Positions 1 through 38,340 of a stretch of 64,000 nucleotides of DNA are shown here, in pieces. Source of the stretch: Nageia nagi. Taxonomy: Eukaryota; Plantae; Pinophyta. The position numbers were made by a program, and so were the translations under genes. The notes beneath the pieces are model-generated. The model had not been told where the DNA came from. It did not search any database and saw only the letters and a list, made by a program, of their open reading frames with translations. The stretch covers positions 45,880,001-45,944,000 of the forward strand of contig JBITNC010000001.1 in NCBI GenBank assembly GCA_050084985.1, read 5' to 3'. How positions within the stretch are numbered: the stretch's first letter is position 1; the number at the start of each line of letters is the position of its first letter.

Positions 1-453
1 ATGTATGCTTCTTCTACATTGTTTAGTATATGAATTTCATAGTATGTATTGGTTGAGTGATTGAAAATGGGTCCAATCTTCTTCTTCATTCTTTGTTAAT
101 GCTTGTTCAACTCTATGATACAATGGATAAGGCACTGATATGAACTATAACTTAGGTTGGTTAGGGGTATTAGGTCATATTTTCTCTAAAAAATCATCAT
201 TTCCCTTTGAGTAGAATAAAAACCAATGATCTCAAAGCTTAAAATGCTTTATTCAATGGAGATTGACTTCGGGTTACAATCCCAGGCCAATTGATTAATC
301 AATAGGTCTAGTTTCATTCTCATTTGATCTAGACTACCTAAAAAGAAGGTTAGAGTCAAATAATCTCACATACCTATTGATAACTAGGAGGATTAGCACT
401 TGGTGAAATTCATTTAAAAGTATTTTTCAAAGGGGTATTAATCTATCACAATA
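1..453 (+). repeat. 5' LTR (3' portion) of the Athila-like element
   Basis: Colinear with ~19943-20397; ends ...AAAGGGGTATTAATCTATCACA(ATA) just before the PBS. Exact end uncertain by ~3 bp. Confidence 0.8.
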
Positions 454-458
454 ATTTT

Positions 459-476
459 TGGTGTCATTAACAGGGA
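459..476 (+). promoter_or_regulatory. Degenerate primer-binding site (tRNA-Asp type, Athila-like)
   Basis: TGGTGTCATTAACAGGGA matches TGGCGCCGTTGCCGGGGA, with differences that are mostly C>T/G>A transitions; it lies immediately after the LTR. Confidence 0.65.
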
Positions 477-789
477 GAGAGATAGTTGGAGAAGCTATAC
501 CTTTCTAAGAATGACATATTCAACACTATGTTGAGGAAAGAATCTAGAAATAAAATATGATTATAATATCTTTGGTACTAGTGAATTTATAAAAATACAA
601 GAGAAATTGAATCTTTAAGGTATTTTTCTTATGGAAAAATCTACATTTCAAACTACTATTGAATGGATTGAAATATATAACACAAAGAAGCATGGTAATT
701 TTCTTATATTGGTCATTACTTTGGTTATTATTTCAGTTTGAATATATAGAGCTGAATTTTTAGGCATTGTTAAGATGGCTTTTAAAGTA

Positions 790-1149
790 GGCTCTAAAAA
801 ATGGATGTTGGATAGATATAAAGCTTTGAATTTGAATGAGTTTATGTTTACTAAACTTATTCTAAATATAGTATTATAAAATCTCCCAAAGTTTTAAGGG
901 AGATTTAATGAATCATGTGAGGTACACTATAATGAATTTATAAAAGTGGTCAATTATTATGAGATTGAAGATGAGGATATGGCTATGAGAATTTTCTATG
1001 AGTCTTTGTCAGGAGAAGCTCAAAGTTGGATTAATAGCCTACCCATTACAAGCTTAAAGGATTTTGGTCAATTAGAAAAAAGTTTTTTTTTCTTTGGTTT
1101 AAAGTTGAAGAAAATGAAAATCTCAAAGTTTATCAGCAATGTGAAATAG
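790..1149 (+). pseudogene. gag: Retrotransposon gag remnant (Athila-like element)
   Basis: LPKF*GRFNESCEVHYNEF...EDEDMAMRIFYESLSGEAQSWINSLP...FGQLEKSF resembles the Retrotrans_gag signature (F..SL.G.A..W..SLP); stops and frameshifts are present. Confidence 0.8.
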
Positions 1150-2339
1150 GGGTAGAACTTATTGAGGAAATTCTTTTGAATCAAAGGATATTATGTTCAA
1201 AGAAATTCTAAATGATGAAATGTGGACTCTTAACAATTTACATGGTTATTCAAATGATGAATATCAAGTATAATCACACGATAATTTACTTGAAGATATT
1301 GATTCAAAAAATAGTAAGGATTTGGATGATATACAAGAAAAATAAAAATGTATCAACATAAAATTATTGAATTTCTTGAGGCTGATAGTTGTGAGATAGA
1401 GTAAATCATTCATCATGATGAAGTGTTCATAGATGTAAGAGATATAAATGGTAAACATGACTTTGATGAGTTTTTAGTAACAAAAATAAATATTGATTTA
1501 TCTTCCTTATTATTGTCTTCAAGTATTTCATTACCATAGTTTAGTTTTGAACAATAACATGAAATGCAAGATCTGATTAAGACTACCAATTTGGGATCAA
1601 TTTTTAGAGTTTGGTTTATTTTATTTTCAAGTTGAGAAACAGTTGTCCATAGACATTGATTTTGATAAATTAGCTTATGATGTTATCTATTGGAATATAA
1701 ATTTTGAGAAAAATACATTTTTTAAACAATGTGCTAAGTTCATAATTGAATCTACAAGATTTCAAAATACACTTCCTAGATGATAAGAAAATTCATTTGG
1801 GTAAGTTGAGATGTTTTGTAAATCAAAAGAAGAAACTTTGGATCAAGTTTAAAAAACATTGCCATTTTGCAAAATAGATGAGATATTTAAAAATTTTGAT
1901 TCAAAAAATCATAACCAAATGCCACACCACATGCCAATCTAACCTTTGTTGGTTAAATGAGTATAAATTACTAAGTTACTTTGCAATAACTTGAGCACAT
2001 TTTGAAAAATGATTGGTTATGTTTTATTTTTCTTAACCTTGTCATAAATTGTATAAATTTAGAGTGGTTTTTACATATTTTTTAGTTTTTATTTATCTTA
2101 GAAATAACCTAGAATAATTAAAAATCTCAATTGATTCCCTTTTGATTCAACATTTGTCCTAGATAGAGCATGTGTTGTAACACAACTATACCCCTTCTCA
2201 TAGGGGATTGATTAGGCTTCCTTTTTAGCAAATATTATCATTAAGACCCAATTTGGTCTTTTCATTACCCATAATTAATTATCATATGAATGTAGAAAGA
2301 AAACTTTATCTAAAAACATGTGTTTGATGGAAAATTAAG

Positions 2340-2830
2340 TCCCATTAGGTAAGGAAAATGATTATTAGGTAAGAGTGTCTTTCATTTGATAAGCCTTAGT
2401 TTTATTAGTTTTGGTAATCAAGTAAGAATGTTCATTGTAGGTAAGTTCAATCATCATTAGATAAGGAAAGAACCTATTAGGAAAGGATAAGTATCATTGG
2501 ATAAGGATTCACTTCACCAAGTAAGGTTACAACTTGTCAAGTAATTTGATTCATTATTGGATAAGAGTGTTTATTATCGAATAAAATCTATTATCATCAA
2601 GTAAGAATTTTACCCATCATATAAGGTCAAAATTCATTAGATAAGAGATCAAATTGTTGGTTAACTTTTGTTTCTATTAGATAAGGGGTGTGATTATCAA
2701 ATAACATTTATTTTATCTAATAAATTTCAAAAAAAAACTAAATAAAGCTTTTAATTGGAAGAATAAATAGTTACCTTATTAGGTGAGACTCTTGTCACAT
2801 CAACTGAAGTTCTTCACATTAGGTAAGTTG
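2340..2830 (+). repeat. Degenerate ~20-21 bp minisatellite, core CATYRGRTAAG
   Basis: Recurrent CATTAGGTAAG / CATTGGATAAG / CATCAAGTAAG / CATTAGATAAG at ~20-21 bp spacing. Confidence 0.65.
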
Positions 2831-2999
2831 TAAGGTAATCATAAAAAGTAATCTTGAAGATTGTAAAAGTTTATTAATTTCTTTTGAGTATTAGGGAATC
2901 ATAGAAAACCATAATTGAGCCATAAAATTAACCCTATAAGCCAAAATAGCTTGCATTTTTATGGTATCAATTATGATTTCCATGCTTTATCTCAATTAG

Positions 3000-3718
3000 A
3001 TAAGAATGATAGAAATTCTAAAAGTAGTAATCTTAAACAATGCATTTGGAGATGAATGCAGCTATAGATCACTAGGATCTTGAGGAATTTATCATAAAGG
3101 GATTATCAAAAGAGCAATTCAAATTTTGACAAATAATAAGAATTATGTTTCTTTCTAGAAGTTGATAACATATACAAAGGTGTAATAGACCCTCCTGAAT
3201 ATGAACCAAGGATGATGTGGAAGCTATATAATATGACAAAATAAGGTGCACAACTAGGGATTCATCAATAAAATTGATGGAATTTCAATTTGGAAAAGTT
3301 AGTATGCCCTAGGTTCATTTTTTCAATGACCTTTTGAATTGGTTAATTCAAAGATATGATCCTATTAGGCATAACTTTGTAGATGATAGAGGTTAGACAA
3401 TATTAGAATTAAAAAAGTATAGGATTAGGAAAGCTTTCAATCTTTAAAGAAATGGTAACCCCTTTAACTTAGCTACTTTCCAAATATATTAGTTCTTTGT
3501 GGGAGATTTTAAAACTTGTGCTATGTATCAAGATGAAATACCCCTATATGGCCATGATTCTTTTCCTTTGAGTATATTTTTATTTAACTAATGTGCTAAA
3601 TTTTATCATAAAATATTATCTACATGCTAGGGCATAGAAATCATTTGTTTATTCCTAGGGAGGTGTTTTTCTTTATAGTAAGAATTGCCTTTACTCCTCT
3701 TGATGTGTATGATTAGGC
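3000..3718 (+). pseudogene. 5' part of a decayed additional ORF of the Athila-like element
   Basis: Removing the 3719-17035 insertion and one TSD gives a continuous reading FTPLDVYDWTSYLFKRMDNELVN. Product unidentified; start approximate. Confidence 0.45.
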
Positions 3719-3742
3719 CATGAGGGGGTCACTGTTAGGAAA
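3719..3742 (+). repeat. Left terminal inverted repeat
   Basis: CATGAGGGGGTCACTGTTAGGAAA; imperfect inverted match to 17012-17035. Confidence 0.8.
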
Positions 3743-5736
3743 TGGTAAATACCAGTGAGTCATACTAAGGGGTATTTTTAATTTCAAGTTTACTTATTGG
3801 TATATTGGTATGTATTTTATAGAGGGAGGGGGTAGGGGTATTTTAAAATAATAAAAAAATATATATTGATATTAAATAAGGGGTTGGGGGGAGAGGGGTG
3901 AGGGGGGTGCACTGGGGTAACACGAGGGTGGGAGACTAGGGGGCGAACCTCTATCAGGTTGATAGTAGGGGAGAGGGTTGGGGAGTGGGTGTTATATTCA
4001 ATTTTGTAATCTAAATTTTTTATAACTTTAAGTTTTCAAAATATCAATAATTCAATAACCATTTTCTATTTTTTATCTAGCTAATTATAAACTCCTTTGA
4101 ATTATTTTTTACCATAAATTGTTACAAGAAAGATAAATTCAAAAATTAATCTATTTATATATATTTAATCCAAAATAATTTTATTATTATATTTGTTACA
4201 TTTCAAAGAACATATAAGAATATAAGTGTATATTAATAAGTATTACAATATTAGAACCTTCATAAAATTTGTTGATGGGAAGAGACAAATGTCAAATCTT
4301 CATCCTTGGCAGGTTGCACATAGGCTCGAACCATGATACCCATTACCAACCATGATCCAAACAAATTGAAATGATAAACTTTCTTAGACCTTTGAGGAGA
4401 CATTTGAGGTATATTATCTTTCAATTAATGTTTGACCATAATTTGGAAGTAAATTATGTTTAGAACCTTATTAACATATTCCATCGAGAAAATGGAGTAG
4501 CATTAATTGCTAAGGAAATATCCAATGTTACCTTACCATGGAGCTTAGTTATGTAGTTGGAGATGAAAAAAATTAGGGCTTAAAATGAATGCCTCCCTCA
4601 CAAAACCCCTAAATCATTTTCACCATGTTAGAGAAGGAAAGAAGAGGGGAGCTATGGGAGAAAAAACCCAGCCACCATGTGCATGGAGACCTCTTAATTT
4701 GGTGCAGGAAGCTATTGATGATTTTGTGAGTTAAAAATGGTGCTTACTCTTCATTTTTTCCTCTTTGTTTTGATTTTTTTTTTCTATAAGGGTTGCATTA
4801 GAAATCTATCAAAAAGTATATAGTGATTTTTTCTTTTATATAAGCATTTGAGGGCCATGCCACATCCAAGAAGAATATATTAAGGTATTTTGAGATATGA
4901 TATTTGGGTCATTTTTTCTCTATAGTAGTATATGACATATCTAGACTAGAGTGCTATATCCAGTATCATTGTGTTGTTTGGAAAGTATCTTCAAATCATT
5001 ATTCAGCAAAGTAGTCCACATTGATAATAGTGACTTTTTGGAGTATTTTTTCAACATTATCTTATGATGAATAGCATTTATTTCATTTATGTCTCCATGT
5101 TTATGACAAAACCTACCTTAATGCATATTACTTTGCACAAAGTAGTCAATTTTTTCTAGTCTTTAGTAGTGCATAGTTCTTGGACAAGATTTTGCATGTT
5201 GCTTCTTGCCTTTAATCAAATGCCTTCTTGATGTTTTGCATATATTGAACACATGGCATTATAATTTCCCCAAGCACCTATTGTGAAGAATTTTGTGAAT
5301 GCTATTTCACCTTTATTCTCCATAAGCAATTTCTATATGTTGAATAGTTTATTATGCTTAACTAACTATGAATTTAACAATTATAATAGGTTAATTGTAG
5401 TTTTTTCTTGTGTAGTGAGTCCAAATAATAAATTTTTGATTATCAGATTGCATCTATTGACAATAGACAAATTGCTATATGGACTATGCACTTCATATAT
5501 TAGGGGGCATTGGGTTTTCATGAGGTTGTTTTATGTGTCATCAATACAGTCTTAGCTTGCTTTTTTAGTTTTTGATACACTAACTATATGAAGTATTTTC
5601 AGTACATTGAGTATTGTATGGAGAAATGGGATTTGAGATATTCCTAAGAAGTCAAATATTTCTTGGAATGTTGTTACATTATTTTGAAGCTTGATGTGCT
5701 TTCAAAAGTTTTTAATTTTTGATTTCATATTTGTAG

Positions 5737-5850
5737 GAATGCATGGTTAGCTTGTATGCAGTGGATGTAGAACTCTTCTTATCTATTTGTAGGGTGCAAC
5801 AAATGTTTGTTGTGTAATGTGCAACACATTAACTATAGTTCCACCTCTTG
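5737..5850 (+). pseudogene. LSD1: Captured exon of an LSD1-family gene (first LSD1-type zinc finger)
   Basis: From ATG 5739: [35 protein letters not shown], matching the LSD1 finger CxxCRxxLxYxxGAxxVxCxxC. Bounded by TTTGTAG| and |GT splice sites; both stops are TAG, consistent with CAG>TAG. Confidence 0.9.
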
Positions 5851-6899
5851 GTTCACATCCCAACCTTAGTACTTTTTATATTTTTATTTTCTTTTACTTT
5901 TATTTTACACTTGTTGAGACCATTTCATTAGGATATTGATCAATATGGGAAGGAAACAATTGTTCATGTCTATATAATAAGACCTGTAGAAAGTGTGTAT
6001 TTTGTTCCTTATCTTGCTAGTAATAGTTTTGTATTGGCTATGATGATTGAGATGCATCTATGTTTAGAGATATTGATATAATGTTACCAACAGTTGCTGA
6101 ATAGTTAATGACATAATCTCTATGTTAAATTGGTGCACTTGGAATATAACGAGAAAAATGTCAAATACTTGAGATACATAGATCAAAGTTAACTCTTTAA
6201 ATAAAAAATATATATCAATTATTATAATGTTGGTTATCATCAATATGGTATTTTCCATAACAAGGAAATATTTTGTAGATGAACAAAGAAAACATGTGCA
6301 AGTAGTTTGGCTTGATGAGGATACTAGAAATAATCCTCTCATTTAGGTGTCTAATATTCTCATCTCAAAGACTTTCATATACTTTTATCACAATAATAGG
6401 GTGGAAGGATCAAGAAGGAAGAAGTTTTTGGATTCCAATCTTTAGACCCTGTATTTAGTTTCTCTAAGAATTGTTGAAATGAGCAGAGTCACAATGATTT
6501 CATTAAAGTGGAATATCTTGCTTCTATTGCTTGTGTTTGGTCAAGTCAATGGTTTTTACTTAAGTCATAATGATTTAATAGTGGATGCCATATTATGGAT
6601 TCAATAAATAAACAAATTGTGGTAAATGATGAAGCATATGCTTTATAAAGGGAAAAGTAAATTCTAAATACAAAATTGGTCTATATGATAACATCTTGTA
6701 TCATCTAAAATGATGCATGTTGATGATAGATTAAGTATATTAATAAAAAAGTAGCTAGGACAAATATGAAGATGAGACATATAGAATACCATCTCATTAT
6801 AATGGAAGTATTTTTTTTAGCTTTTGTATTACAAATAATAATGATAGTCTTTTTTTAGCTTGAGAGTATTTAGCTTTAGCATTTGTATCTAAGATAAAT

Positions 6900-7800
6900 T
6901 TCCCAAGAAAGTTCCATCAATGGAGGCTTCAATGTTATTCTAGATTGGTATTAAAATTTGTACTAATTTTAGAACATAGTTTCATTTCTTGATAGCTAAA
7001 TTTGCTAATGTAAGTTGTGTATAGTATTTCATCTAGAGACTTCCAAATTCCAATATTTCTTTGATCTTCCATTTGTGAAAATACCTTTAACATGATTCCA
7101 TCTTTGTGTGGCTTGATAGTTTTGTTTAATAAACCACTAAATTTTATTCCAAATTTAACTTCCCATTGATCATTGAAGAAAATGATGAGTAGATTTTTTA
7201 TTTTCTTTTGAAGCAAAACATCTATTCTCAATTTGCTATAGATAATCTCCAATGTGAATAATCTTCTTCATGTAGGCATAGTGAACTTTGCTTGGCCTAA
7301 GGCACTAAGTAGCTTGGAATAACTTTGTGCAAGTTTTAACATGCCAAGATTGATGGCAACTTATATTGGATCTTGTAAAATAAGGAATTTCATTTTTTGC
7401 ATCCTACTTAAAAAAGATCTTGAAGTATTAAATCTTTTATTCAACTTCCAATTTGTAGTCACACTTATTACCACTAAGAAATCTTCATTTATGAATATAT
7501 GCACAACCATCATACTAATACCTTGGGTTTAGGTTTACAAGGGTTGCTTCATCATTTGTACATAATCTAAGTCAAGTGGAGTATTATTTTTTTCCATTTG
7601 AATGCATTAATGCCTCTTCTCACTGATCTTGATTTGCCTTTGCTCTTCTCTATCAAACATCAAGGCTTGCCAAGTTTTGGAATGAAATGCAAGTAGGGGC
7701 ATCTTGATCACATGACTTGTAGGCTTCCTTCTGAGTAATAAATTCCACTATTTTCTCAAGAAATTATTATTAAAACAAGCAAACTCAAATTTGTTATAAA
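6900..7800 (-). pseudogene. Possible highly decayed LINE ORF2 fragment inside the transposon cargo
   Basis: Weak motifs only: PCKPK (cf. W..lC.PK..GGLG) and IIFFNDQW (cf. I.FW.D.W) in and upstream of ORF 6935..7252. Confidence 0.25.
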
Positions 7801-8044
7801 CTTATTGACTTTCATCAATGCCAACTAAAAGAGATTTAATGACCATTAATAGCATGAACACAAATGAAGATTTGAATCAGTAACTCAAAAGCTTTTCCCC
7901 TATATGAGATTTGTTGTTTCTTATTGCTAAAGTACATGAAGTGTTTAGAGTCAATATTTATTATTTAGAGTAACTTTTTACTGGGAACTTCCTATTAATC
8001 TAAGCTATAGAGTGAATCTCTAGTTATTCCTAGCAGTTTTTGGA

Positions 8045-8575
8045 TTAGATTTACATTTAATTTTAATCTATTATATTTAAATTATATTTTTTAATATTTT
8101 TTTATCAGATTTTATTTTTAATGTTTTTACTATATTTAAGTTTAATCTTTTAAGTTTTATATTTACAATTTTATTTTTATATATTTAAATTTTTAAGTGT
8201 AATGTTTTATTCTTTATATTTATATTTACATTTAATTTTAATATTTTATATTTAAATTATATTTTTTAACATTTTTTATTAGATTTAATTTTAATGTTTT
8301 TACTATATTTAATTTTAAACTTTTAAGTTTTCTATCTACAATTTTATCTTTATATATTTAAATTTTTAAGTGTAATATTTTATTCTTTATATTTAGATTT
8401 ACATTTAATTTTAATATTTTATATTTAAATTATATTTTTTAATATTTTTTTATTACATTTAATTTTAATGTTTTTACTATACTTAATTTTAAACTTTTAA
8501 GTTTTATTTTTACAATTTTATTTTTATATATTTAAAATTTTAATTGTAATGATTTATATAATTATATTTACATTT
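8045..8575. repeat. Extremely AT-rich tandem repeat, ~174 bp x 3
   Basis: TTTACATTTAATTTTAAT recurs at ~8050, ~8225 and ~8398 with colinear downstream sequence (ATGTTTTTACTATA, TTTTAAGTGTAAT). Confidence 0.85.
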
Positions 8576-9409
8576 AAACTGAACCTCTCCAAAACAAAAT
8601 AGGATAGCTTGGTAACATGGGCATGTGTTAGGTTTGAATGGCTAAAATGTAAATTATTGGTGAGGAATAGGATTTTATGTGGAAGGCACAAATATAGATT
8701 ATTCTTTTGATTCAAGGACCATAGTTGCATAGGAGATTGCATAGTGGATGAACAATTTTATGCATCTTTGGGAAAGGAATACCTTTAGATGCATCGAATC
8801 TTGTGAGTACATGGCTTTCATATGAAAGTATTTTAGGTTTTTATGTGTGTATAGAAAAATTTGGGTGGTCTTGACATCGTCAATCTCATATGGTATTGTG
8901 AATGTCTTAATGACATTCACCTCTTGAAATATTTATGCAAAATCAAATGTATCCTCATCTTTTTGTTGATTTTCAAATCTTAATATTGCTTATATGCATC
9001 CAACCTAAGGGGGAGAGATTTTAACCTAGGCCTCTATTATGAGAGTTTTAATATACCCTTTTTCTCTAGCTCTCTTATTGGGTTATTCGTAATACTATGA
9101 AATGTCATTTTCATATGCTTTATTGTTAATGAGACTTATGTTTCCTTATTATATCAATAACATTTGATTCTTGCACCATAAGGGTATAAACCACATAATT
9201 TTTAGATTGGTTTAACTTTGACTTATCATTATATCAAAATAATAACTTTAGCAAGTTGAATTCTAGATTATATGATAGCTCAAATTGTGTAAAATGCCTT
9301 TGTGTTTATAAAATATTTCTATAAGGATCTACATTATCCTTTGTAAACTTATATATAATAAATTTATTTTGTGATGATTATTTCTTCAGGTTTATTCTCT
9401 TCATACAAT

Positions 9410-12400
9410 ATGAATGAAAAAATAGAGTATTATCTTAAAGATACAAATGGTGAAGTTGTGGCTATAATTAAACTTAAGAATGCATGCACACTTGGTGATG
9501 TTTGAGAATATTTGATATTTTATAATATTTGTTTGAGTATATTAGTAAAGCGGGGATTCCTATCAAGCCAAAATAAGAGGACACATGTGATGTTGAAGAA
9601 AAAATCATTAAGTTTAGAAGAAAATTAACAGAGCTTGGTGAAGAACTTATGAATCATGGAAAAAAACAAAAGACTAGACCAACAGACAATGATAAATTTG
9701 AAGTTCCACATAAAACCATTGAAAAGCATATTAGTTTACAAGAATCAATAGCATGTGAAAATATTAATGAACATCCAACCTCGATCAAAGCACAAAGTTT
9801 GATTGAATATAGTATTAGGGAGTTATGGAACTCCAAATTACTAGAATTGTTACTTCCAATTGAGAGTATCAATCTTTAGTTCTCCTTGGATAGTGATAAA
9901 CCTATGATAAAACTTCATTGTGATGTTTGTAATGTTAATTATGGATCAGGTGATGTAACTAGAGTTGGAGATACTATGCATAATTTTAGAAGAAGCCATA
10001 TAATGTCAGATCGCCACATAAAAAAAAAGAATTCTCATAATTCTGGTCAAAATATAACATGTGAGAAAGATTTACTTGATAAAGAAAGATATGATACATT
10101 GGATTATCATGATAAGATATTACATGCAATCAATGTATTTGATTATTTCATTAAGAAAGATATTAGTTCTCCATTCAAAGTTGTGGAATCCATAATTGGA
10201 GATTACAAAGATAAGACTTCTATAAAAGTGGAATGCACAAAATGTAAAAAATGGTTTGCATTGATCCCCAAGATAGGAAATATTGTGACTTCTCTCCCTA
10301 AACATATAAAATCAAAGTCACATAATCAAAATTTAACAAGTCAAGTAGCAATAAATATAGGTTTAGTGGGGTGACCGAAGAAGGCTTCAAATGATGGGAA
10401 ACAACAAACTTTGTCAAAATTTTTATTTCCTAGTTCAAGCAATCTAGGAGAAAGGATCCACAAGCACAATAACTTCAACTCTAGGTATTATTTGTTTCTA
10501 TGAGATTTTATATAATTTTTTAATAATTCATTAATATTTTATTAATAACATGCAATTTCTTGTATAGGTTTTCTTTCTTTGTCACTCTTATGTTGGGGTT
10601 ATTGGAAACCAAAGGAGAAATATAATGGAAGAGAAACAAATGTCAAAATTTTAATGGATGATCAAAGTGGTAGGAATGTAACATTGAACCTCACACAATA
10701 GGTATAGTAGAATACCTATTTTGTAAGATTACTATTGATGGAACTTACAAGCATAATAAATATGAAAGAATATCTAAAAGAGAAATACCATTTGAGTCAT
10801 TATCATGTCATTTTTGTTCAAATATACCAAATTACAAAGATTTTAGAAAGCATTTGTATTAAAAACAACTTACTATAGTGAAAAGAGACAATAGAAATAC
10901 AATAAAAGGAAGACAATTAGATTATTTAACACACCATGAATTGCAACAGTATGCGAGAGTTTCTTCAACACATTACAAAGTAGCATTAAGAACCATTTGG
11001 TGGAAAAAAACCAAGGTTGTAAGCTTATCAATAAGAAATAGATCATTGAAGGAAAAATTATTTGAATCATCTCAAAGAAAGGATGTTTATAAATTTTCTT
11101 GAGATGTATGTGAAGCACATGAATTGGGAAAATTAAAATGAAAGCAAGCATTATGAGATTTTGTTCAAGATTTAATTCAAAATTTGCTACGTTGTAAGTA
11201 AGGTAGAAGATTTATAAAATCTTCAGCTATAATATATGAATTGATCAAGATATGGGGGGGTCCTTATTTACATAAATTTCTTAGTGCAAATTTAGATGGA
11301 CCATCATTATCTACAACTAGAAGGCAAACTATAAAGGCTCTATCTTATCTTCCAAGAGATCATGAATATATCTTTGATGCAATTAGGAAAATATATGTAA
11401 CACATAAAGCAAGCCTTGGCATTAAAGGTTATGTTCTAGTGATTCTTGCAGAAGATGAAATAAGAGTTGAAAAAATTGTGAGGTGTTTTATGACTTTCAA
11501 TTCTAATTTTGTAGATAGTTAACACTATAATATTTTTTATTATATGAATAGTAACAATTATTTTATAGGTGGATTGCAAGCAAAGACATATTGGTTGGAT
11601 TTTGTGGGGGAATTGAACAACATCAATGCTAGTCAAAGTTTTCCATTTTAGTAGGAAAAAATGAGGATTGTTATAATATAATTATTAATGTTTTTTAGGA
11701 TAATGAAATTAGTTATCATGCTAATTTTGTTCAAGATTAATGGATCAATATTGATAATCTATTGAAGTAATATGTTGAAAATTCATTAGGTCTAGTTATT
11801 GGCCATTCTTTCGATAGAGATAGTAGGTGTAGACAATTAATGTTGAAAAGTTATACTTCTAACAATGGAAAGAGATTTAGAATTCCTTAGGAAGGAAGGA
11901 AATTATCTACAACAATATTGAATGATGGTAGTATAACTGGGCTTCATGATCAAGATTTCATTCATAATGGAAAAAAACTAATTAATCCACTATTTAGTGG
12001 TAGGTGGGATTTGATATTAGGAACTAAGTTAATAATGTTTAATCATATAATTATTCTTTATAATTCATTCATTATGGAGGAGCATCAGCTAACAAATGAA
12101 TATATAAAAAAAAATGATCGACAAAATTGGGGATTAACATAATGCATTACATCCAGGAATGTGCAAAGATGTTTAAGAGAGATAAGAAGTCCTTCTAGGG
12201 GTAAGACAGAAAGAACCTTAGGTACTAAAATGTACTTATCAATGGTTGCCAACTACATTGACATATTCTTATTTAATAATTTAAGTATTTGGGAAAGATT
12301 GAGATATGCATCTAGAGTGTATCATTTTTTGACATTATGGCTTTCTTGAGTATGAAATAATGCTACTATAAATGCCCAACTAAATTTTATTAGCAATGAA

Positions 12401-13788
12401 GCATATCAAGATGTAAAGATTTCATGTCATTTTACTGTACTTTTGATAAATCTGTTTCAAGATATATATCCTTCTTTATCATGCATATTACATTCAATAA
12501 GATCAGATGTTTGTGAATTTGTTTTTAGTAAAGTAGGTGGTATGGTTGGACAGGAAAGGGCATATGATTTTGTAGATTTATTACATGTAATTGGAAGCTT
12601 AAACAAGGTATCAGAAGAAAAAAGTAATCTTGAAGGATTATATATTGGAAAAGCTCATAAAAAATAAGAAAATTTATGGCATAAGTTAAATCCAAAAATG
12701 AGAGAGAAGTGTGGATTTTTATCAGACTATAATTGCATATCTTCTGATATTGATATTGTAGAAGCTCTTAAGCAAGGATTAAAAGATGCACAATATGATC
12801 TTGAACATTTTATATACATCCTAAAAAATTGAATATGGCTTATGGTGGTTTAAGCCATGGGATTGTGGTAATAATTTTCCTTTAGTGGAAGTAGGTGAAT
12901 GTGTTGATGTTTTTCTAGTAGAGAGTTCACATTTAAACACTATTTTTGATGGAGTTTCTAAAGATTTAAAACATATACAAAATGAAACTAGTTCATCTAT
13001 TGATCCATATGTCATGGAGAGTGAATGGCAACATGAAATTGATGAAATATTAAATCATGTAGAAAAAATATATACAAAAAAATTAGTGTAATGGTAGAAG
13101 TGGATGGAAAAGAAATATATAAATCAACACTTGTTATTCAATTGAATGGAAACCCCAAATTATCAAAATATAGGTTGATTAAAGTATGACATGGAAATTA
13201 TTTTCATTTAAATGAAATTTTTCTAATATTAGAGAATGCTTCCTACTTAAGGATTAGGTCTAATTGTGGGGTTTTATTTAAGCAAGAATTATCATATTTG
13301 AATGATTGATCTCAAAGAAAGGGTATTCCATGCAGTACTAAGAAAGGTGTTTGAAGTGGGAAATGGTACCATGGAAGAGTGAAAAGGATGAGGAAAAATG
13401 AAGACAATAAAGTGGTTGAATATCGTAATCCAATAGATCTATTGGACTATCTAGAAGATGTTGAGATTCAATTGAATTGGTATAATAAGATAAAAGGTCA
13501 CATTGATTCACTTATAATTTGATAGATCATGAATTTGTATCATTATAATCCATCATTACAATTGCTAATCTAACATATTTCTCTCAAAAGGATTATTATC
13601 AATTGGAGGAAAATGATTTCAAAATATTTAATGATTATGCTAAAAGTTTGCAAAAAGGTAGGATTCAATCATTTTTAGTAAGTTATATGATTGCATTTTT
13701 TTTTAATATTTTCATTTGTTTGAAGTTTTATTAATTTTAATAATTCATGAATGCTAATATTTGAATTAATATTTTAGATCAAATATGA
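9410..13788 (+). pseudogene. Intron-containing P-element-like DDE transposase, decayed
   Basis: GT-AG introns 10485-10567, 11483-11568 (splicing gives in-frame KIVR|WIASKDILVGFCG) and 13658-13777. Motifs in order: two C2H2-like fingers (ORF 9886..10374), GGPYLHKFLSANLDGPSLST, ILAEDE (D1 ~11454), GHSFDRDSRCRQLM (D2 ~11813), HDQDFIHNGKKL (DxxH ~11952), DRQNW, SDVCEFVFSKVGG (E ~12515). Many stops and frameshifts. Confidence 0.85.
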
Positions 13789-16700
13789 CACGGATAAAAA
13801 TTGCATTTGTGATAAGGATACATTTTATGTGACTTTTCATAGGTACTATCTTTTTTTCTTATTGCACATTTACAGTTATTTTTTTTTTTTTTGTATTTAC
13901 ATTTACATTTACAATTGATTATTTTATGATATTTTGTTTTTTTTATGCATATGGGTTTGAGCAATCTTTTTGTAGGTCAGTTCAATGCCTTTCTTGTGAT
14001 GATTTATATGTGTCTTATAACTTTCAAATGTTACAATATTTCTTATCTATAGATTTTAGTTGCATTTTTTGCATTAAATTAGCATTCATGAATTTGTTTG
14101 TTTCGAATTCCTTGAATAGTTATTTGACTTTTCCTATGACCATTAGAGTTACAAAAATCATGCACAAAGAATCATATAATTGAAATAAAAGCCAATAATA
14201 GTTGTTATTTTATAGCTCACGACTTGTAGTATTTCTTAAAAAAAGATAAGCCAACATTCTTCAAAATAATAACACTTTGATTTCTAACACTATTTATCAT
14301 TTTTTCTCATAATATGGAGGATTTATGGAGCTCAACTAGAAAATGGTTGGATTGAGGAGGATATTTTTTATACATCAACCATGTCAAAAACTTCATACCA
14401 GTATTTAAAGATTTCATTAAAGACTTGTTATTTTCAGTTATACAATGATAGTTATAATTATTTTTAGTTTGGAAGTCTTTGTTATTTTTAGTTATATAGT
14501 GAACAAATAATGCAAATAATGAGTTGTTGATGTTAGAAAACACACAAACTTTATAGTATCTTGTAACTCATGAGTTGTACCTTGTATCAGTTCCTTTATC
14601 ATCATCTCATCAGATACTTATTAAGTTTTGGATCTATGTTTTAGAATTCTTATTTAGTATAATGAGTTCTATATCCCTCTAGTGAAAGTATAAATGTATT
14701 TTTCCTTTCCATGTTACAAGTAATGCCTCCTTTTTTAGTATGGGATGTCCATGGTGATTGTTTCTATCACTAGACTTATGTATAATTTTGCTTTTATATA
14801 CTTATTTTGTCATATTTTGGCATCCATGGATCTTAAAGTGCATTGATTTTTGGTTTGTCTATCTTGTGTTTAATGAGAGGCATGTTTATATCTCTAATTT
14901 CAATTTTTTAGTATACATTTGATATTATCTATTGTGTTGATAGTGCAATTTATAGCTTTTCCTATTGAACACCAATATGTATGCATCATAGGATGATGGC
15001 CTTTAATATCAAGCCAAATAATTGGTAGCCCTCACCTAATTTTCTTTGGTATTGATATACCAAGATACATATATGTGCTTTGGTATTATATATATTAAAG
15101 AGTTGATGCCTTATTTTTCTTATTTTCCTTAAATTTTTGGGTAACTTGTAATATTGTATAACACATCAATTGTTATAGTGTAGCTTCAGTTGTTTTCTAG
15201 TTATATTAGCACCAACAATCATGGAGTTGTTTTCTACTTTGATGGCTTTGTTGGATAGCTCATGATTGCTACATATATTATTTAATGGTGGCAATATTAT
15301 CTTATTAGAAATGTGTTATTTTTTGCACTTTAAACTCTATAGCAATAATTAACATTTTATATGATGATATTATTTTATTAGTGTGAACTCCTTTGCTATG
15401 ATTTGGGATTCAATCAAAACAACCTGTAATTCACATAATTTGGAGAATTGCCTTTATTTATTTATTTTATTTAATTATCATATTTTTTATCTATTATACC
15501 TTACTCCTTGGTATTGCTATTTTTTTGTTGTTCCTATACTATATTATGGTTATTTGTGAACTAGAATTTAGTTCTCATATCTTGGACAACTGAATAAACT
15601 TCTTTTGGTTAAAAGTAATAATTAATAATTGTTCCATTTCTAACAACTATATGTGTTTTTTTTGATAGTGCATGGTATTTCTTAGTTCAAAGGAAAATAT
15701 TTAGTTGTATTAGCTATATATTATATAACATACAATTATTCCCTAATTATTTGGGGTAATATGTGGGTATTAATGAGGGCTTAACCTCATGTTGTGCATC
15801 AATTACTTTAAACATGATGACTAGATGCTTCTTCAATTCCACATGTCATAATAAATTTCTTTAGGGAACAATTGCAATTCCACTATTTATTGAAGAAGCT
15901 TAGATCAAGCACTTTTTGTAAAATATGCAAATACATAATCAAAAAGTAAGGGCATAACCTTTTATAACATAAGGGGAAGAACCTTAATTATTTATAAATT
16001 ATATCTAATTATGGTTGCATAGTTTTCAACATCTATGCAAAACTGTGATAAGCTTGAAGTACTATTTTTTTTCAATGCTTCTATAAAGTGCCAATTAGTT
16101 GAAAAAATCATGATAAATTGGAGATACTAAAAAAAAGCAAAACAATCATGCAAGTAGTTGAAAAGAACTTATTTATAATTGGAATTTTAGTCAACACACA
16201 ATGATTTTTACCCTTCATATTTCCATGTGTTTTTGAAATGTTGATTTGTTCCTGATTAATTGTTGGCATATTTCCAACAAATAATTACCATGGAATTACT
16301 AATAATAATTTTTCAACTATGGACTATACATATGACAACAACATAATATGTTATTTTTCCTAATACTAGACAAGACACAAGACTAACTAAAAAATATACA
16401 AGTAAAAGTATTTTGTCTAGGCACACCTTACTCATTATTTGAGGAGTAGAGAAGGGTTGGCTGTTAGATAGTCTAGAGAAGTTTGAAAGGAATATGATAT
16501 ATAACATATGTTTAATACCATTTTGGCTCTCCACCCCCAACCCTTGGCTACCACTGTAGTTACACCTCTCAACATAATTATATATAGGATAGGATAGTAC
16601 AAGTATAGCATTGTAAGAAAGTCGAATACCAAGTTTGAAAATGTTCTCAATTTTAATCATTTTTTTCACTTTGAAGTGATCTTATTCTGCACATTACTAT

Positions 16701-17011
16701 TTTAGATAAATTCTTTTTACTCCATCTTAGGAGTCAACATTTTGGGAAACTTTAAATAATTGGAGAAAATATTTTCGATTAAAAAAATTTTGAACCACTA
16801 TAATTCTAGGTGATGATATCAAAGAATAAAATTACCAAAGGTATTAAAGATTGATCTATTTTTTTTTAGTAAAATGGTAAGTTTTAAAAAGAGATTATTA
16901 TTTATTACATAAGGGTTTACCATGAGGGGTTTAATAAATTCAAATTGAAGGTAGTAAATTTTTAAAATAGGGGGTTTTTTAATAAGCTTACGAACACAAA
17001 TGTTTTGAATG

Positions 17012-17035
17012 TTTTCTACTAAGTGACCCACCATG
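17012..17035 (-). repeat. Right terminal inverted repeat
   Basis: TTTTCTACTAAGTGACCCACCATG, followed by TSD copy GATTGGAC. Confidence 0.8.
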
Positions 17036-19400
17036 GATTGGACTAGTTATCTTTTCAAAAGAATGGATAATGAGTTAGTAAATTAAAAAAGGACTATGAA
17101 GCAAAAATAGATTTACACTTTTCTAGGCATTCCATTTTACTCCATGTTATTATTTCATAGCTTGAGGGTAGTTTGGTTAGGGAACTAAGTCCTGATGTTA
17201 AATTTTGCATTGTGTAAGAAATGCTACCAAATATTTATCAATGGGTAGGTAGCTACCAATGGTTTAGTGAGGTCTTCTTGAAAAACATCTATTACAAGTT
17301 TACACAATCTATTCCAAGAATATTTGGTCATTTCCTAAACATTTTAGATGAATTTGAGGAAAGAATAATGATAAGAATGTTAAGATGAAACTTAAAACCA
17401 AATTTGTTTCCTAAGTTCTATTCTGATTCTATTTTTTATGAGGAAGCTATAAGAGAACTTGTTGAAGATTTCAAAGTGAGGATTGGTAGAGAATTGGGGA
17501 AATATCATTTCTTTAAGTAACCATGTGAAATAGGTCATAGGATATTTAATAGTGCCCATTACTTTATTAATACTCTACATATTATGGATCAATATGGTTT
17601 TAGAAAGGTTCTTTGGAGGCCATTTGATACTTATAACAAATTTGCTAAAATTTGGATTAAATCAACTAATTTCAAAGTTTCTCATGATGAGGATGAATTT
17701 CAAGATAAGGTGATTCAAGCATTGAAAGAAAGAAAACCCTATTTAGGAAAAGTTTGTTTTTGATAGAGGTGTTTCCATTTATCTTTAGTTAAATATATTT
17801 TAGAGTAGCTAAAGAAAATTAGGAAAGGTACCATTGATACAATGGAGCCTAAAGTAGAAATAATATATTACAATTAGAAGAACGATAATTCATTATAAGC
17901 TATGTTGAATAAAGAGCCTAAAGAAATTTTGATTCATTATCATCAACCCATTGTGGAGATAGCTATAAAGGTAGAAGAAGAGAAAATGAATTCAAGAAGT
18001 TTAGCATTATTTCCTCCTTATAAACTTATTCTTTAGTCTATCATACCATATTAGAGAAATGCTATGCAAGAAGAAATGTTGAAAAGGTTAGAGAAGTGTG
18101 AGACCTTGTTGACACAAACATAAATTTTACCCAAAGGTATTATTGTTTAGGGAAAAAACATTCTTATGGATCTCATTATTGCTAGAAAGTACTAGGCACA
18201 AGGCTTTATCATACCTCCTAGATATAAAATTTATGTACAGAATATTGAAGATGATTCACTAGCTAAGAAATTGATAATGGAGGAAGCTTCATCATCATCC
18301 TCTATGGCCCCTCATGAAGTTTTCAAAAAATATTTCACTTATGTAGTTATGCTAGTAAAGGAGATACCCAATGATTGAGGCTCTCTAAATACCTCAACTT
18401 GATGATCCTTTAACAATAGTATCTTCAAAGGATTTAAAAGAATTAGGTTCTCCTTAGACATTTTTGACTGCCCCTTCATCTCCTGTAAAAATTCAAGGTG
18501 AAAGAAAATATAACGGGATACTTATTTCTTTAGAGGATCCAAAATAATCATCAACCTAATTAGTTGAAGAGGTTAGTGAGGTTCTCTTAGAATTAAAAAA
18601 GATAGTTCATTAAAAAAGATAGTTGTTGAAATAACACTTGATAAAGAAAGCAAAAATTAGAGAGTGAATAGAAAGAGCTTGATATAATAAAATGGTTATT
18701 AAAAAGGAATACTATAACTTTTAAAGGAATAATAATCATAATAAAGTTATTGAAAACTTTAAAGGATATGATTATAAAAGTTGATGATTAGACTCTTGCA
18801 ATTTTGGGGGGAAGGAACCAAATTAAGTCAGGTTTTGATTTAATGAAGGGAAATCATAAAGTTCTATTCAATAATTTAGTGATAGGTACAAAGTATACCT
18901 TTGGATACAAATCAAATAAAATTTATTCAGCTAATGTAATGTACAATAAAGCTAAGTTATTTGTGGGTAAGGTAATGTAGTCAATAGAAGACCTAGAAAA
19001 GGAATAGAGCAAAATATAATTGATAGATGATTAATATATATGAGGAAGAACCTAGTGATAAGATTGAAAAATTAAAATCTAGATTGATTGAAATTCCTCA
19101 AGGCATAGATCAAAAATATGAAAAATCTCTATAAGTTACAAATTAGTTTGCAAAGATGGAAAGATTGATAGGTAATTATGAATCAAGTTTTCATAATTAT
19201 ATCAAGGAATTAGTGGTAATAATTTAGATCTTGCATGGATTACCAAATTTCACTAAGGAGGAATGGAATATATGTGAAAAACTATGTACAAGTTCTTCAC
19301 CATATATTAGTTGAGATAAGAAAGAAATAAAGAATCTATTTTACCAATTCAAGGAACATGTATAGTTTTGGGCAGAAGTTATCTAAGATACACCTAGTAG
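17036..19400 (+). pseudogene. 3' part of the decayed additional ORF of the Athila-like element (K/E-rich, coiled-coil-like C-terminus)
   Basis: Continues the frame interrupted at 3718; purine-rich coding-like composition with many stops; not recognisable as pol. Confidence 0.4.
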
Positions 19401-19499
19401 ATAAGTATGAGATGCGTTTTTGAAAGAAGCTAATTAGTTTGAAATATTTTGATCAATACACTATCTAGGAACAAAGTTTTTATTCATGGAGGTTTATAA

Positions 19500-20397
19500 T
19501 ATAATCTATAAAAGGAAGGGAGTAGTAGGGAGAAGGATCTTTTGCCAGTCAATCAAGATAGTTACATATGGTCTGTGGTGTATGTTTAGGGTTTTGTCAC
19601 TCAATTTTTTAGTCTTATTATGTCTTTTGTTCACCATTTTTAAAGCATGTACTATGTGATTTTTAAGAAATATTCTAGAGAATAAGGTTATATTTTTTTC
19701 ATCTTGCACCCAACTTTCAAGTAGTGTAGGTTAGAAGCATTTTTACCAAATATTGTCACATTATTTAGGCAATATAATGCAATTGTAATCAAGAAAGGCA
19801 TTGGATATTATATTAAATTTTTATGAAATATGATGATGTATGGTTGCAATATTTCAAGGGCATTTCCTTTGTTATATTTTCCTAAGATTATGTGATGTGC
19901 TATTGTGTGTGCTTTATTTATTATTATAAGTATCAAATAGTGAATGAACTCTTTTTCTACATTGTTTAGTAAATGAATTTTATAATAAGTGTTGGTTGAC
20001 TGATTGAAACTGGGTCTAATATTCTTCTTCATTATTTATTAATGCTTGTTCAACTTTGTGATACAATGGATAAGCATCAATATGCATTGTAGCTTAGGTT
20101 GGTTACAGGTATTTGGTCATTTTATCTCTAAGAGATCATCATTTCCCATTGACTAGAATAACAACCTTTGATATCAAATCTTAACATGCTTTATTCAATG
20201 GAGATCGAATTTGGGTTACAATCTTAGGCCAATTAATTAATCAATAGGTCTAGTTTCATTATCATTTGATCTAGACTACCTAAAAAGGAGGTTAGATTCA
20301 GATAATCTCACATACCTATTGATACTTGGGAGGATTAGAACTTAGTGACATTCATTTGAAATTCTACATCAAAGGGGTATTAATATTTATCACATCA
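19500..20397 (+). repeat. 3' LTR of the Athila-like element (start approximate)
   Basis: 19943-20397 is colinear with 1-453. The start is guessed from a PPT-like stretch near 19466-19495. Confidence 0.7.
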
Positions 20398-29477: not shown

Positions 29478-29728
29478 TGTGAGGTAGGAAATTGCTCCAT
29501 GCATCAAAAGCATTGTATTAGATTGTGTAACTTCCTTAATACATAAGAACAATGAATCTTCATATTCAACTCCTTGGGTGACCTTTGAGATACAAAAAAA
29601 CTCTTCATACTACCTTAGTAATGACACTTTAAATTCTAGCACACACAAAGCTTTGAATTTACTAAATATAATATGTAACTATTAATATAATATCTATACC
29701 ATAATCCCTAAGGATTAGGTATATAACA
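29478..29728 (-). repeat. 3' LTR of old copia
   Basis: TGTGAGG...TATAACA, colinear with 44219-44469. Confidence 0.92.
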
Positions 29729-29749: not shown

Positions 29750-31300
29750 GTGTTGGTAAGTCTAAGCATCTTCGTAAGCTTCTCAAACGTTTCTCTTTGA
29801 AGCGCCTTGGTGAAGATGTCTACTATTTGCTTATATGTGGGACAATATTTCAATTGTATTGTCTTGACATTTTACATGATTTTGAATCAAATGATACTTT
29901 GTATTGATGTGCTTTGTTTAATCATGAAACTTTGGGTTCTTGGCTAATTGAATTGAAAAAATATTATCAATTACAAGTGGAGTTGTATGCATCTATTTTT
30001 TTTGCAAATCTTCTAGTATCTTCTTAAGCCACACAATCTCCTTTGTTGCCTCTACAGAAGCCACATACTCTACCTATATAGTGTAATATATTAGAATGAA
30101 TTACTTTTTGTGATCTCTAAGAGATAGCTATTGATCGAAGACTCATGTCATATCCTGAATTCAAAACTCCATTTTATTTTTCACCATCAAAGTATGAATC
30201 TATATATCCAATCAATTTGAAGTCTCCTGCTTTGGAATACTTAATCCCTAGTTCTTGTGTGCCTTTCAAATATTGGAAAACTCTTTTTTTTTGCATTTCA
30301 ATTCCCTTAACATGGTTTTTGCATAAAGCAAGAGATAATTTCAACCATAAATGAAATATTTACTCTAGTTGTGGTTAGATATATGAGACTTCCAATAAGA
30401 AATCTATACTTCATTACATCCTAAAATGCATTCCCTTTAATAGATCTCAAATTCAAATTTTGTTCCATTAGAGTGGAAAGAAGATTACAAATTTTCATAC
30501 CAAATTTGTTCAATAATTCTCCAATGTACTTTCTTTGGGAAATGAAAATATACCTTGGGTTTTGTGTCACTTCAATGCCCAAATAGTAATGAAGATGTCC
30601 CATATTTTTTATTTCAAAACCTCTCTTCAAATCTTATTTCATGGATGCAATGTAACTTTCATTAGTCATAGATATCAAAAGATCATCTACATACACCACA
30701 AGATATACAATAGTTTTTCTAACTTTTCTGGTAAATAAAGTTGCATCATCAGGATTAAAGTGTTCAAAGTTTATCTTCAAGATATGCTCAGTAAGTTTTT
30801 TGTACCAAGTGTAAGGAGATTGTTTTAGGCCATATAAGGACTTGATGAGCTTACATACATTTTTTTCCTGATCCTTCATTGCAAATACTTCTGGTTGTTT
30901 CATGTACATATTTTCTTTCAAATCACTATTCAAGAAAGTAATCTTCATATTTATTAGATGAACTTTCCATCCATGCTGAGATGAAATTACCAATAAAGAA
31001 ACAATAGTAGCCCATTTTTTTGTGGGAGAAAATATCTCATCATAGTCAATACCCTGTTTCTTTATAAAACCCTTAACTATAAGGCTTGATTTGTATTTCT
31101 CAAGTGAGCCATCTAATCTATATTTATTTTTGTAGACCCACTTGCATCCAATAGGTTTGGTTCCATATGGAGGATCCACCAACTTCCACATATCATCCTT
31201 GATGAGACAACCATACTCCTTTTTCATAGCATCCTTCTAGACATCATGAGAAAAAGATTATTTAAAGGATGTTGGATCATAATTAGCAAAGAAATTCAAT
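29750..31300 (-). pseudogene. pol: Copia RT and RNase H remnant (old copia)
   Basis: ORFs 30634..31227 (KPIGCKWVYK, LYGLKQSP, VVYVDDLLI) and 30421..30630; QIVDIFTKAL near 29805-29830. Confidence 0.92.
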
Positions 31301-38338: not shown

Positions 38339-38340
38339 AT

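What the first reader, a model, noticed from the sequence alone, without database searches (positions are those of the whole stretch)
4560..5900. 'Pack-P': transposon has captured the 5' end of an LSD1 cell-death regulator gene
Seen: a single LSD1 zinc-finger exon (5737-5850) with both splice sites lies inside the TIRs, and I found no second or third finger. It is missing from the ORF track because of two TAG stops. Upstream, 4560-4738 looks like a 5'-UTR exon ending AAAATG|GT, followed by a T-rich ~1-kb intron (inference). Established: gene-fragment capture with introns retained is known for Pack-MULEs, CACTA and Helitrons, and LSD1 regulates programmed cell death. I am not aware of such capture by a P-like element in plants.
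Basis: partly seen in the sequence, partly recalled or inferred. Interest (0 to 1): 0.82.

Follow-up and report, generated by a model that had tools for sequence, protein, structure and literature searches.

The report
Dead LSD1 exon inside transposon debris
A single, broken copy of the first coding exon of a plant LSD1/LOL cell-death-regulator gene lies in old transposon-derived DNA about 4 kb upstream of a dead P/THAP9-like transposase gene. That this transposon captured it is plausible but unproven, and such gene scraps are very common in gymnosperm genomes.

Summary
Window 5737-5850 (+) is one LSD1-type zinc-finger exon, bounded by AG| and |GT and broken by two in-frame TAG stops. No second or third finger occurs anywhere in the 64 kb on either strand.

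It is a DNA-level copy of a first coding exon, because the next finger does not follow it. It cannot encode a working protein.

The capture reading is only partly supported:
- A dead transposase gene lies about 4 kb downstream on the same strand. It is invisible to Pfam; a protein-language-model search places a homologue of it next to P/THAP9 transposases.
- The proposed terminal inverted repeats and target-site duplication are no better than chance.
- None of 45 transposase relatives carries an LSD1 finger.
- Nothing supports the proposed 5'-UTR exon.
- The whole region lies between two LTR-like repeats, so an enclosing LTR element or an unrecognised nested element could equally be the carrier.

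I could not reach the parental LSD1 locus or other copies of the element.

A 2026 survey (PMC13477047) counts about 400,000 transposon-captured gene fragments per gymnosperm genome. Most host elements carry a single fragment, and first and second exons are preferred. This is therefore an ordinary case; only the kind of carrier might be unusual. Earlier notes of this scan report similar gene scraps in transposons elsewhere in this genome.

The parts
5737..5850 (+). LSD1/LOL-type first coding exon, now a pseudo-exon: 2 nt, then ATG plus 36 further codons, then 1 nt. It encodes finger 1 only.
   Evidence: Translation; motif scan; Pfam zf-LSD1 on 5793-5861 at 19.4 bits, E=0.001; the only meaningful Pfam family among 82 stop-free segments of 3719-9400.
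5757..5822 (+). Core of the zinc finger, [21 protein letters not shown]
   Evidence: Full match to CxxCRxxLxYxxGAxxVxCxxC. It is the only window with at least 7 of 10 signature positions in all six frames.
5748..5750 (+). First in-frame TAG stop, at the position of the Gln that precedes LVC in LSD1/LOL proteins (the Gln is recalled from memory)
5790..5792 (+). Second in-frame TAG stop, at a free position of the finger
4739..5736 (+). T-rich stretch upstream of the exon, ending in a good acceptor (T-rich tract plus tgtAG). It may be intron sequence copied with the exon; the extent of the copied block is unknown.
   Evidence: AT skew -0.11 to -0.19; sequence; no Pfam family
4560..4738 (+).
   Evidence: G+C 0.38-0.43 against about 0.3 nearby; no other evidence
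9853..13186 (+). Dead transposase gene of a Pfam-invisible family with P/THAP9-like neighbours. It has an intron at 11484-11566, probably another near 10400-10585, and many in-frame stops.
   Evidence: tblastn of homologues P0003, P0005, P0047, P0051, P0055, P0056; HMMER hits; language-model neighbours
3719..3743 (+).
   Evidence: Not above chance. GGGTCACT occurs only 3 times in the window and two of these are the two proposed ends.
17011..17035 (-).
2199..2224 (+). Left arm of an alternative, better-scoring terminal pair, CATAGGGGATTGATTAGGCTTCCT
   Evidence: Top of the weighted scan; z=4.7 over 40 nt; alignment
18281..18306 (-). Right arm of the alternative terminal pair, CATAGAGGATGATGATGAAGCTTCCT on the reverse strand
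1..450 (+). LTR-like direct repeat, left copy, cut by the window start. It ends ...ATCACA and is followed 8 nt later by the PBS-like TGGTGTCA.
   Evidence: Self-BLAST 8-450 against 19951-20394, 86% identity; alignment
19944..20394 (+). LTR-like direct repeat, right copy, ending ...ATCACA
898..1146 (+). Weak gag-like reading frame just inside the left LTR-like repeat
   Evidence: Pfam Retrotrans_gag at 15.8 bits, E=0.016, below the cut-off

Best explanation
The stretch is a dead, single-exon scrap of an LSD1/LOL-type gene: the first coding exon with its start codon and finger 1.

Shown:
- It was copied as genomic DNA, because the exon borders are retained and the next exon is not joined.
- It now sits in old, silenced, CpG-depleted transposon-derived DNA.

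Inferred:
- Most likely it is a passive passenger in the long non-coding 5' part of a decayed P/THAP9-like cut-and-paste transposon, which itself sits inside an older LTR element.
- It would have been picked up by template switching or filler-DNA synthesis during repair of the double-strand break left by excision. This is the accepted route for Pack-MULE and CACTA cargo.
- It then decayed, at least partly by C-to-T changes at methylated sites.

It does nothing today. It has two stops in 37 codons, one finger of three, no detectable downstream partner exon, and a transposase that is itself riddled with stops.
For: - Identity and state of the exon.
- Only one finger in 64 kb.
- The exon ends at |GT after VPPLG, and the in-frame continuation shows no further finger.
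- Same-strand transposase gene at 9853-13186, supported by dozens of homologues.
- P/THAP9-like nearest neighbours for residues 330-860 of the homologue P0051, scores 0.94-0.95, with all ten best family-bearing hits in one family or clan.
- Family consensus DPPHxxKKxRN.
- The exon lies inside each of the three best-scoring candidate terminal pairs.
- Two of these pairs are concentric and both begin CAT[GA].
- GGGTCACT is rare in the window, and two of its three sites are the proposed ends in inverted orientation.
- No nested TIR element directly brackets the exon.
- No retroelement domain in 3719-9400.
- CpG is almost absent throughout.
- Stop density in the transposase is 1.8-1.9% of codons.
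- Background rate of such capture in gymnosperms: PMC13477047.
Against: - The element's ends are not established. BLAST finds no inverted repeat there, 77 pairs do as well by plain score, and weighted scores form a continuum.
- There is no second copy in the window, and no outside copy could be fetched.
- The exon is 3.6-4 kb from the first transposase homology, with anonymous DNA and a 173-bp tandem array in between.
- The enclosing LTR-like repeats offer another carrier.
- P-superfamily membership fails Pfam and the PDB profile search, and the structure model was unusable.
- The parental gene was never seen, so 'captured' as opposed to 'left over' is inference.
Confidence: 0.5

Rival explanations
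1. The exon is cargo or filler of a different element: the enclosing LTR retrotransposon-like structure (window start to 20394) or an unrecognised, eroded element nested between it and the transposase gene. The P/THAP9-like gene is merely a neighbour in the same transposon nest.
For: - Direct repeats of at least 445 bp at 86% identity, 19.9 kb apart. Both end ATCACA, with a PBS-like TGGTGTCA 8 nt after the left one and a weak gag match just inside.
- The transposon's own ends are unproven.
- LTR elements are the dominant carriers of captured fragments in gymnosperms; PMC13477047 illustrates capture with Gypsy and Copia elements.
- Earlier notes of this scan describe similar gene scraps in LTR elements of this genome.
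Against: - Capture through an RNA intermediate would more often give spliced fragments, whereas here the exon borders are intact.
- No pol domain or other retroelement signature was found in 451-9400 or 12800-19950 apart from the weak gag.
- No TIR pair brackets the exon locally.
- The LTR reading is itself unproven, because the left copy is cut by the window edge and no target-site duplication can be checked.
Confidence: 0.3
2. It is the last recognisable relic of a duplicated host LSD1/LOL gene (an ordinary pseudogene fragment). Transposons later inserted around it, and no element ever carried it.
For: - It is a genomic-type fragment with exon borders.
- Only one exon survives.
- The region shows heavy decay and CpG loss.
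- No terminal pair is significant.
- Pseudogene fragments are abundant in gymnosperm genomes (PMC13477047).
Against: - The exon lies between two LTR-like repeats and inside all the best candidate transposon ends, so it would have to predate none of them.
- No trace of fingers 2 and 3 was found in the 58 kb downstream on the same strand, even with relaxed half-motif scans.
Confidence: 0.13
3. The finger is a working or once-working part of the element: an upstream exon spliced to the transposase, or a second element gene. That would give this transposon lineage an LSD1-type finger.
For: - It is on the same strand as the transposase.
- The exon ends in phase 1, and an AG at 9576-9577 would allow an in-frame join to the open frame that starts at 9577 (my reading of the sequence). 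One join in three is in frame by chance.
Against: - There are two stops in 37 codons.
- None of the 45 homologues carries the finger motif, including P0005 of Riccia (677 aa) and P0056 (911 aa, a cluster-mate of the scanned P0045). Full-length P0051 (1227 aa) has no Pfam domain at all.
- The family has its own pair of CxxC...HxxxxxH fingers at 9910-10330.
- The exon keeps the LSD1 start codon and the VPP(P)G tail, as expected of a copy of a host first exon.
Confidence: 0.03
4. It is an exon of a live host LSD1/LOL gene with giant, transposon-filled introns.
For: Gymnosperm introns can be very long, and the exon has an acceptor and a minimal donor.
Against: - There are two in-frame stops.
- No further finger occurs in the window.
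- It lies between LTR-like repeats.
Confidence: 0.02

Closest known systems
Transposon-captured gene fragments in plants: Pack-MULEs, CACTA and Helitron cargo, and the genome-wide capture described for gymnosperms in PMC13477047
   Same: A single exon-sized piece of a host gene sits in transposon-derived DNA and is non-functional and decayed. It is a first coding exon, which is the class that survey found to be preferred, and it is a single fragment, as in most host elements.
   Different: The carrier is not established here, and copy number and donor gene are unknown. Pack-type elements are by definition non-autonomous elements with clear TIRs and TSDs; this locus has a transposase gene and no provable ends.
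LSD1/LOL zinc-finger genes (Pfam zf-LSD1, PF06943)
   Same: It has the full finger signature, a start codon just ahead of the finger and a VPP(P)G tail. From memory of the Arabidopsis proteins, GATxVCC resembles LOL1, while the very short N-terminus resembles LSD1.
   Different: It has one finger instead of three, two stops and no further exons. It is a fragment, not a family member in any working sense.
P element / THAP9 transposases (Pfam TNP-like_RNaseH_N, TNP-like_GBD, TNP-like_RNaseH_C, Tnp_P_element)
   Same: The language-model nearest neighbours of the homologue P0051 are these families. Motifs EDET, SDG and DPPHxxKxxRN, and an acidic CxEDTFS block, appear in the same order as I recall for P/THAP9. 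An 8-bp TSD with CATG termini is possible.
   Different: No Pfam or PDB sequence match was found, even for the full-length relative. No THAP domain was found; CxxC...HxxxxxH fingers take its place. The ends are unproven. The relatives whose source is known come from a liverwort and from unnamed plant-like assemblies.

Membership tests
zf-LSD1 (PF06943) domain | Signature CxxCRxxLMYxxGAxxVxCxxC | tested here: met
   5757-5822 matches with no substitution at any fixed position; the stop falls on a free position. No match in 100 shuffles.
zf-LSD1 (PF06943) domain | Pfam model reaches its gathering score (20.2 bits) | tested here: inconclusive
   Only the stop-free second half (5793-5861) could be scanned; it scores 19.4 bits, E=0.001, over model positions 13-24 of 25. 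The first half, 5751-5789, is 13 aa and too short for the tools. It was left out rather than read through the stop.
LSD1/LOL gene (working family member) | Three tandem LSD1 fingers in an open reading frame | tested here: not met
   There is one finger, two in-frame TAGs, and no other whole or half finger in 64 kb.
Pack-type (gene-carrying) TIR transposon | Terminal inverted repeats and a target-site duplication that enclose the host fragment | tested here: inconclusive
   The proposed pair 3719/17035 ranks third of about 1.7 million pairs in a continuum of scores, and 77 pairs are as good by plain score. BLAST finds nothing there. The exon is inside all three best pairs.
Pack-type (gene-carrying) TIR transposon | Cargo aligns to a donor gene, introns included, with sharp capture boundaries | not testable with these tools
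Pack-type (gene-carrying) TIR transposon | Several dispersed copies share the termini and the cargo | not testable with these tools
   There is no second copy in the window. The metagenome scan gave only two short, distant loci.
P / THAP9 transposon superfamily | Transposase matches the TNP-like / Tnp_P_element profiles, or the solved P transposase, by sequence | tested here: not met
   No Pfam match for the window pieces or for homologues up to 1227 aa. A family profile against PDB gave no hit.
P / THAP9 transposon superfamily | Overall likeness of the catalytic region to P/THAP9 transposases | tested here: inconclusive
   ESM Atlas neighbours of P0051 residues 330-860 are TNP-like/THAP9 clusters at 0.94-0.95 with 201-203 shared features, and the ten best family-bearing hits share one family or clan. 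This is a lead, not an alignment. The AlphaFold model had pLDDT 46 and was not searched.
P / THAP9 transposon superfamily | THAP DNA-binding domain at the N-terminus | tested here: not met
   No THAP match. The N-terminal region holds CxxC...HxxxxxH fingers instead.
P / THAP9 transposon superfamily | 8-bp target-site duplication | tested here: inconclusive
   GATTAGGC against GATTGGAC, 6 of 8; 6,203 of the scanned pairs reach 6 of 8.
LTR retrotransposon (enclosing structure) | Two long direct repeats ending ...CA, a primer-binding site after the 5' one, and gag/pol between them | tested here: inconclusive
   Repeats 8-450 and 19951-20394 are 86% identical. Both end ATCACA, and TGGTGTCA follows the left one after 8 nt. 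Gag is only weak, E=0.016, and no pol was found. The left end is off the window, so no TSD can be checked.

The most novel reading that the evidence does not exclude
The 13-16 kb stretch is one P/THAP9-superfamily DNA transposon of a land-plant lineage that Pfam does not recognise. It acquired the first coding exon of an LSD1/LOL gene, with intron flanks, by DNA-level capture. That would be a first described 'Pack-P' case, extending gene-fragment capture to one more cut-and-paste superfamily in plants.
Probability: 0.4. Interest if true: 0.3.

Novelty: new member of a known kind. Interest (0 to 1): 0.17.

Why it matters
It matters little by itself. A dead 114-base exon cannot regulate cell death. 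Gymnosperm genomes are reported to hold hundreds of thousands of such captured scraps (PMC13477047).

Two side points have some value:
- If the carrier is confirmed, gene-fragment capture would be documented for a P/THAP9-like element in plants.
- The transposase family next to the exon is invisible to Pfam and occurs from a liverwort to this gymnosperm, so it deserves proper classification. That is the subject of a separate finding.

A shared small-RNA or methylation link with the parental LSD1 gene is conceivable. It is unlikely to matter for so short and decayed a piece.

Tried and rejected
- **Reading the pseudo-exon through its stops:** The pieces were searched apart. The 13-aa first piece (5751-5789) is too short for any tool and was left out.
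- **Spliced model:** I built no joined model (putative UTR exon + LSD1 exon, or LSD1 exon + transposase). That step is left out.
- **Word search** with the transposase piece 11202-11519 and with 5793-5936: nothing found.
- **PDB sequence searches** with transposase pieces, the family profile and the finger piece: nothing found.
- **ESM Atlas** with the finger piece: nothing found.
- **Metagenome scan**: two short, distant loci without usable ends. The terminal motif was not found in them.
- **AlphaFold model** of homologue P0035: pLDDT 46, so no fold search was run on it.
- **Search for arm-to-arm similarity** between the two concentric candidate elements: only noise.
- **Search for a TIR pair directly bracketing the exon**: none found.
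- **tblastx** of 1-20400 against the rest of the window: no shared coding sequence.
- **Rfam** on 1-20400: nothing found.
- **LINE fragment at 6935-7252(-):** I suspected one, but Pfam found no family there, so I dropped it.
Full report
**What is there.** The window is AT-rich plant DNA (31% G+C) with almost no CpG. Earlier notes of this scan call the genome a gymnosperm.

Frame 5739-5861 on the + strand reads [36 protein letters not shown]. Residues encoded by 5757-5822 fit the LSD1 finger signature C..CR..[LM].[YF]..GA..[VI].C..C with no substitution at any fixed position. The second stop sits on a free position. One hundred block-wise shuffles of the window gave no match even with three substitutions allowed.

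Pfam's zf-LSD1 model matches the stop-free second half alone at 19.4 bits, E=0.001, over model positions 13-24 of 25. Among 82 stop-free segments of 3719-9400 it is the only family that is not noise.

The first piece (5751-5789, 13 aa) is too short for any tool and was left out.

**Exon borders.**
- The coding similarity starts two bases after a good acceptor (T-rich tract, tttgtAG|GA at 5735-5736), with the ATG at 5739.
- It ends after ...VPPLG at CTTG|GTtcac (5851-5852), leaving one base of the next codon.
- The in-frame continuation (SHPNLSTFY...) is not LSD1-like.

The piece is therefore a genomic copy of a first coding exon, not a retrocopy; in a retrocopy finger 2 would follow directly.

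No second or third finger exists in the 64 kb on either strand. I scanned for the whole finger with up to 4 substitutions, for half fingers, and for at least 7 of 10 signature positions.

The two stops are TAG. From memory of LSD1/LOL proteins, the first replaces the Gln before LVC. Several other departures (P to L twice, A to V, V to M) are what C-to-T decay at methylated sites would produce. This is inference, because I could obtain no LSD1 protein from the tools.

**The claimed 5'-UTR exon and intron.** The string AAAATG|GT is at 4733-4740 and G+C rises to about 0.42 over 4600-4750. The stretch 4739-5736 is T-rich on this strand. Nothing else supports an exon. An ATG at that junction would read the next exon in a different frame from LSD1. 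Without the parental gene this cannot be tested.

**The neighbouring transposase.**
- A dead gene lies at about 9853-13186 on the same strand, with an 83-bp intron (11484-11566).
- It carries 5 stops in 266 aligned codons and 6 in 339.
- Its 106-aa piece found 45 relatives among 1.84 billion representatives.
- These include a hypothetical protein of the liverwort Riccia sorocarpa. The 1227-aa P0051, a cluster-mate of hit P0019, came from the cluster look-up.
- None of the window pieces or homologues matches any P-element or THAP9 Pfam model.
- A family profile finds nothing in the PDB.
- The structure model was too poor to use (pLDDT 46).
- The language-model neighbours of the catalytic region of P0051 are P-element/THAP9 clusters at 0.94-0.95.
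- The family consensus shows EDE(T), SDG and DPPHxxKKxRN, and P0051 has CCEDTFS further on.

I accept 'P/THAP9-like' as the best label, but formal membership is not shown.

None of the 45 relatives carries an LSD1 finger. The family has its own CxxC...HxxxxxH fingers. The finger is therefore not a built-in part of this transposase.

They are CATGAGGGGGTCACT at 3719 and CATGGTGGGTCACT on the reverse strand at 17035, with flanks GATTAGGC and GATTGGAC. They do not stand out statistically:

| Test | Result |
|---|---|
| BLAST for inverted repeats | Does not report the pair |
| Same criteria applied to all pairs around the gene (identical 4-nt tips, 6 of 8 TSD, local score at least 11 in 25 nt) | 77 pairs do as well |
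| Composition-weighted score | The pair is third, in a smooth series (35.3, 33.2, 33.1, 32.6, 32.1...) |

The top pair is 2199/18306: CATAGGGGAT--TGATTAGGCTTCCT against CATAGAGGATGATGATGAAGCTTCCT, z=4.7 over 40 nt.

- The two CAT[GA] pairs are concentric around the gene.
- GGGTCACT occurs only three times in the window, and two of these sites are the proposed ends in inverted orientation.
- The exon lies inside all three best pairs.

There is no second copy in the window. The limits of the element therefore remain unproven.

**A wider frame.** Window 1-450 and 19944-20394 are direct repeats, 86% identical over 445 bp. Both end ATCACA. The left one is cut by the window start and is followed 8 nt later by TGGTGTCA, which resembles a tRNA-Met primer-binding site (my reading). 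A weak gag match lies at 898-1146 (15.8 bits, E=0.016). No pol was found.

If these are LTRs, the transposase gene and the LSD1 exon both lie inside an old LTR element. That argues against a live or merely decayed host gene in place. It also offers a second possible carrier.

**Mechanism and odds.**

| Reading | Odds |
|---|---|
| Passive passenger in the non-coding 5' part of the P/THAP9-like transposon | 0.50 |
| Cargo of the LTR-like element or of an unrecognised nested element | 0.30 |
| Leftover of a duplicated host pseudogene | 0.13 |
| Functional exon of the element | 0.03 |
| Live host gene | 0.02 |

That is the accepted route for Pack-MULE and CACTA cargo, and it is inferred here, not shown.

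Under every reading the piece is inert today.

**How new.** PMC13477047 reports:
- about 400,000 captured coding fragments per gymnosperm genome;
- that most host elements carry a single fragment;
- that first and second exons are preferred.

This locus fits that pattern exactly. Earlier notes of this scan describe comparable gene scraps in CACTA, Copia, LTR and Helitron-like elements of the same genome.

From memory, the Wicker 2007 classification already lists the P superfamily for plants. A 2025 paper treats its absence from one plant genome as worth a remark. The only possibly new element is the kind of carrier, and that is not established.

**Verdict.** It is an ordinary dead gene fragment in transposon debris, of low interest.

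Noticed in passing
window 1-450 and 19944-20394: Direct repeats of at least 445 bp, 86% identical, 19.9 kb apart. Both end ATCACA, a PBS-like TGGTGTCA follows the left one, and a weak gag frame lies at 898-1146. This is probably an old, pol-less or heavily decayed LTR element that encloses the whole locus. The left copy is cut by the window start.
   Followed up: partly
CATGAGGGG also sits at 18308-18316 on the reverse strand, next to the right arm. This may be a second, related element into which the inner one inserted, or it may be chance.
   Followed up: partly
window 9853-13186 (+); proteins P0001-P0057: The transposase belongs to a family with no Pfam domain, even in a 1227-aa member. Relatives occur in the liverwort Riccia sorocarpa and in unnamed assemblies and metagenomes. 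The language-model neighbours are P/THAP9 transposases. The N-terminus has two CxxC...HxxxxxH fingers instead of THAP, and a short C-terminal stretch at 13079-13186 also aligns weakly to P0051 (E=0.17).
   Followed up: partly
window 8045-8576: A tandem array of a 173-bp unit, 3.1 copies, 91% matches, only 5-13% G+C. It lies between the LSD1 exon and the transposase gene.
   Followed up: no
window 31434-39741 (-): A Copia-type LTR retrotransposon with 1.4-kb LTRs at 92% identity (31434-32838 and 38337-39741). Open frames match gag, zinc knuckle, integrase and RVT_2. The LTR 3' parts hold short tandem repeats.
   Followed up: partly
window 28092-28517 (+) and 30634-31227 (-): Further retroelement pieces: a Gypsy-type RT-RNase H frame, and a separate RVT_2 frame just outside the Copia element.
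   Followed up: no
window 53901-54387 / 59038-59524 and 29482-29728 / 44223-44469: Two more pairs of direct repeats (84% and 87% identical), which may be LTRs or dispersed repeats of other elements.
   Followed up: no
window 3600-10050: CpG is almost absent (0-2 per 100 bases), as expected for long-methylated, deaminated DNA. This fits TAG stops arising from CAG.
   Followed up: no
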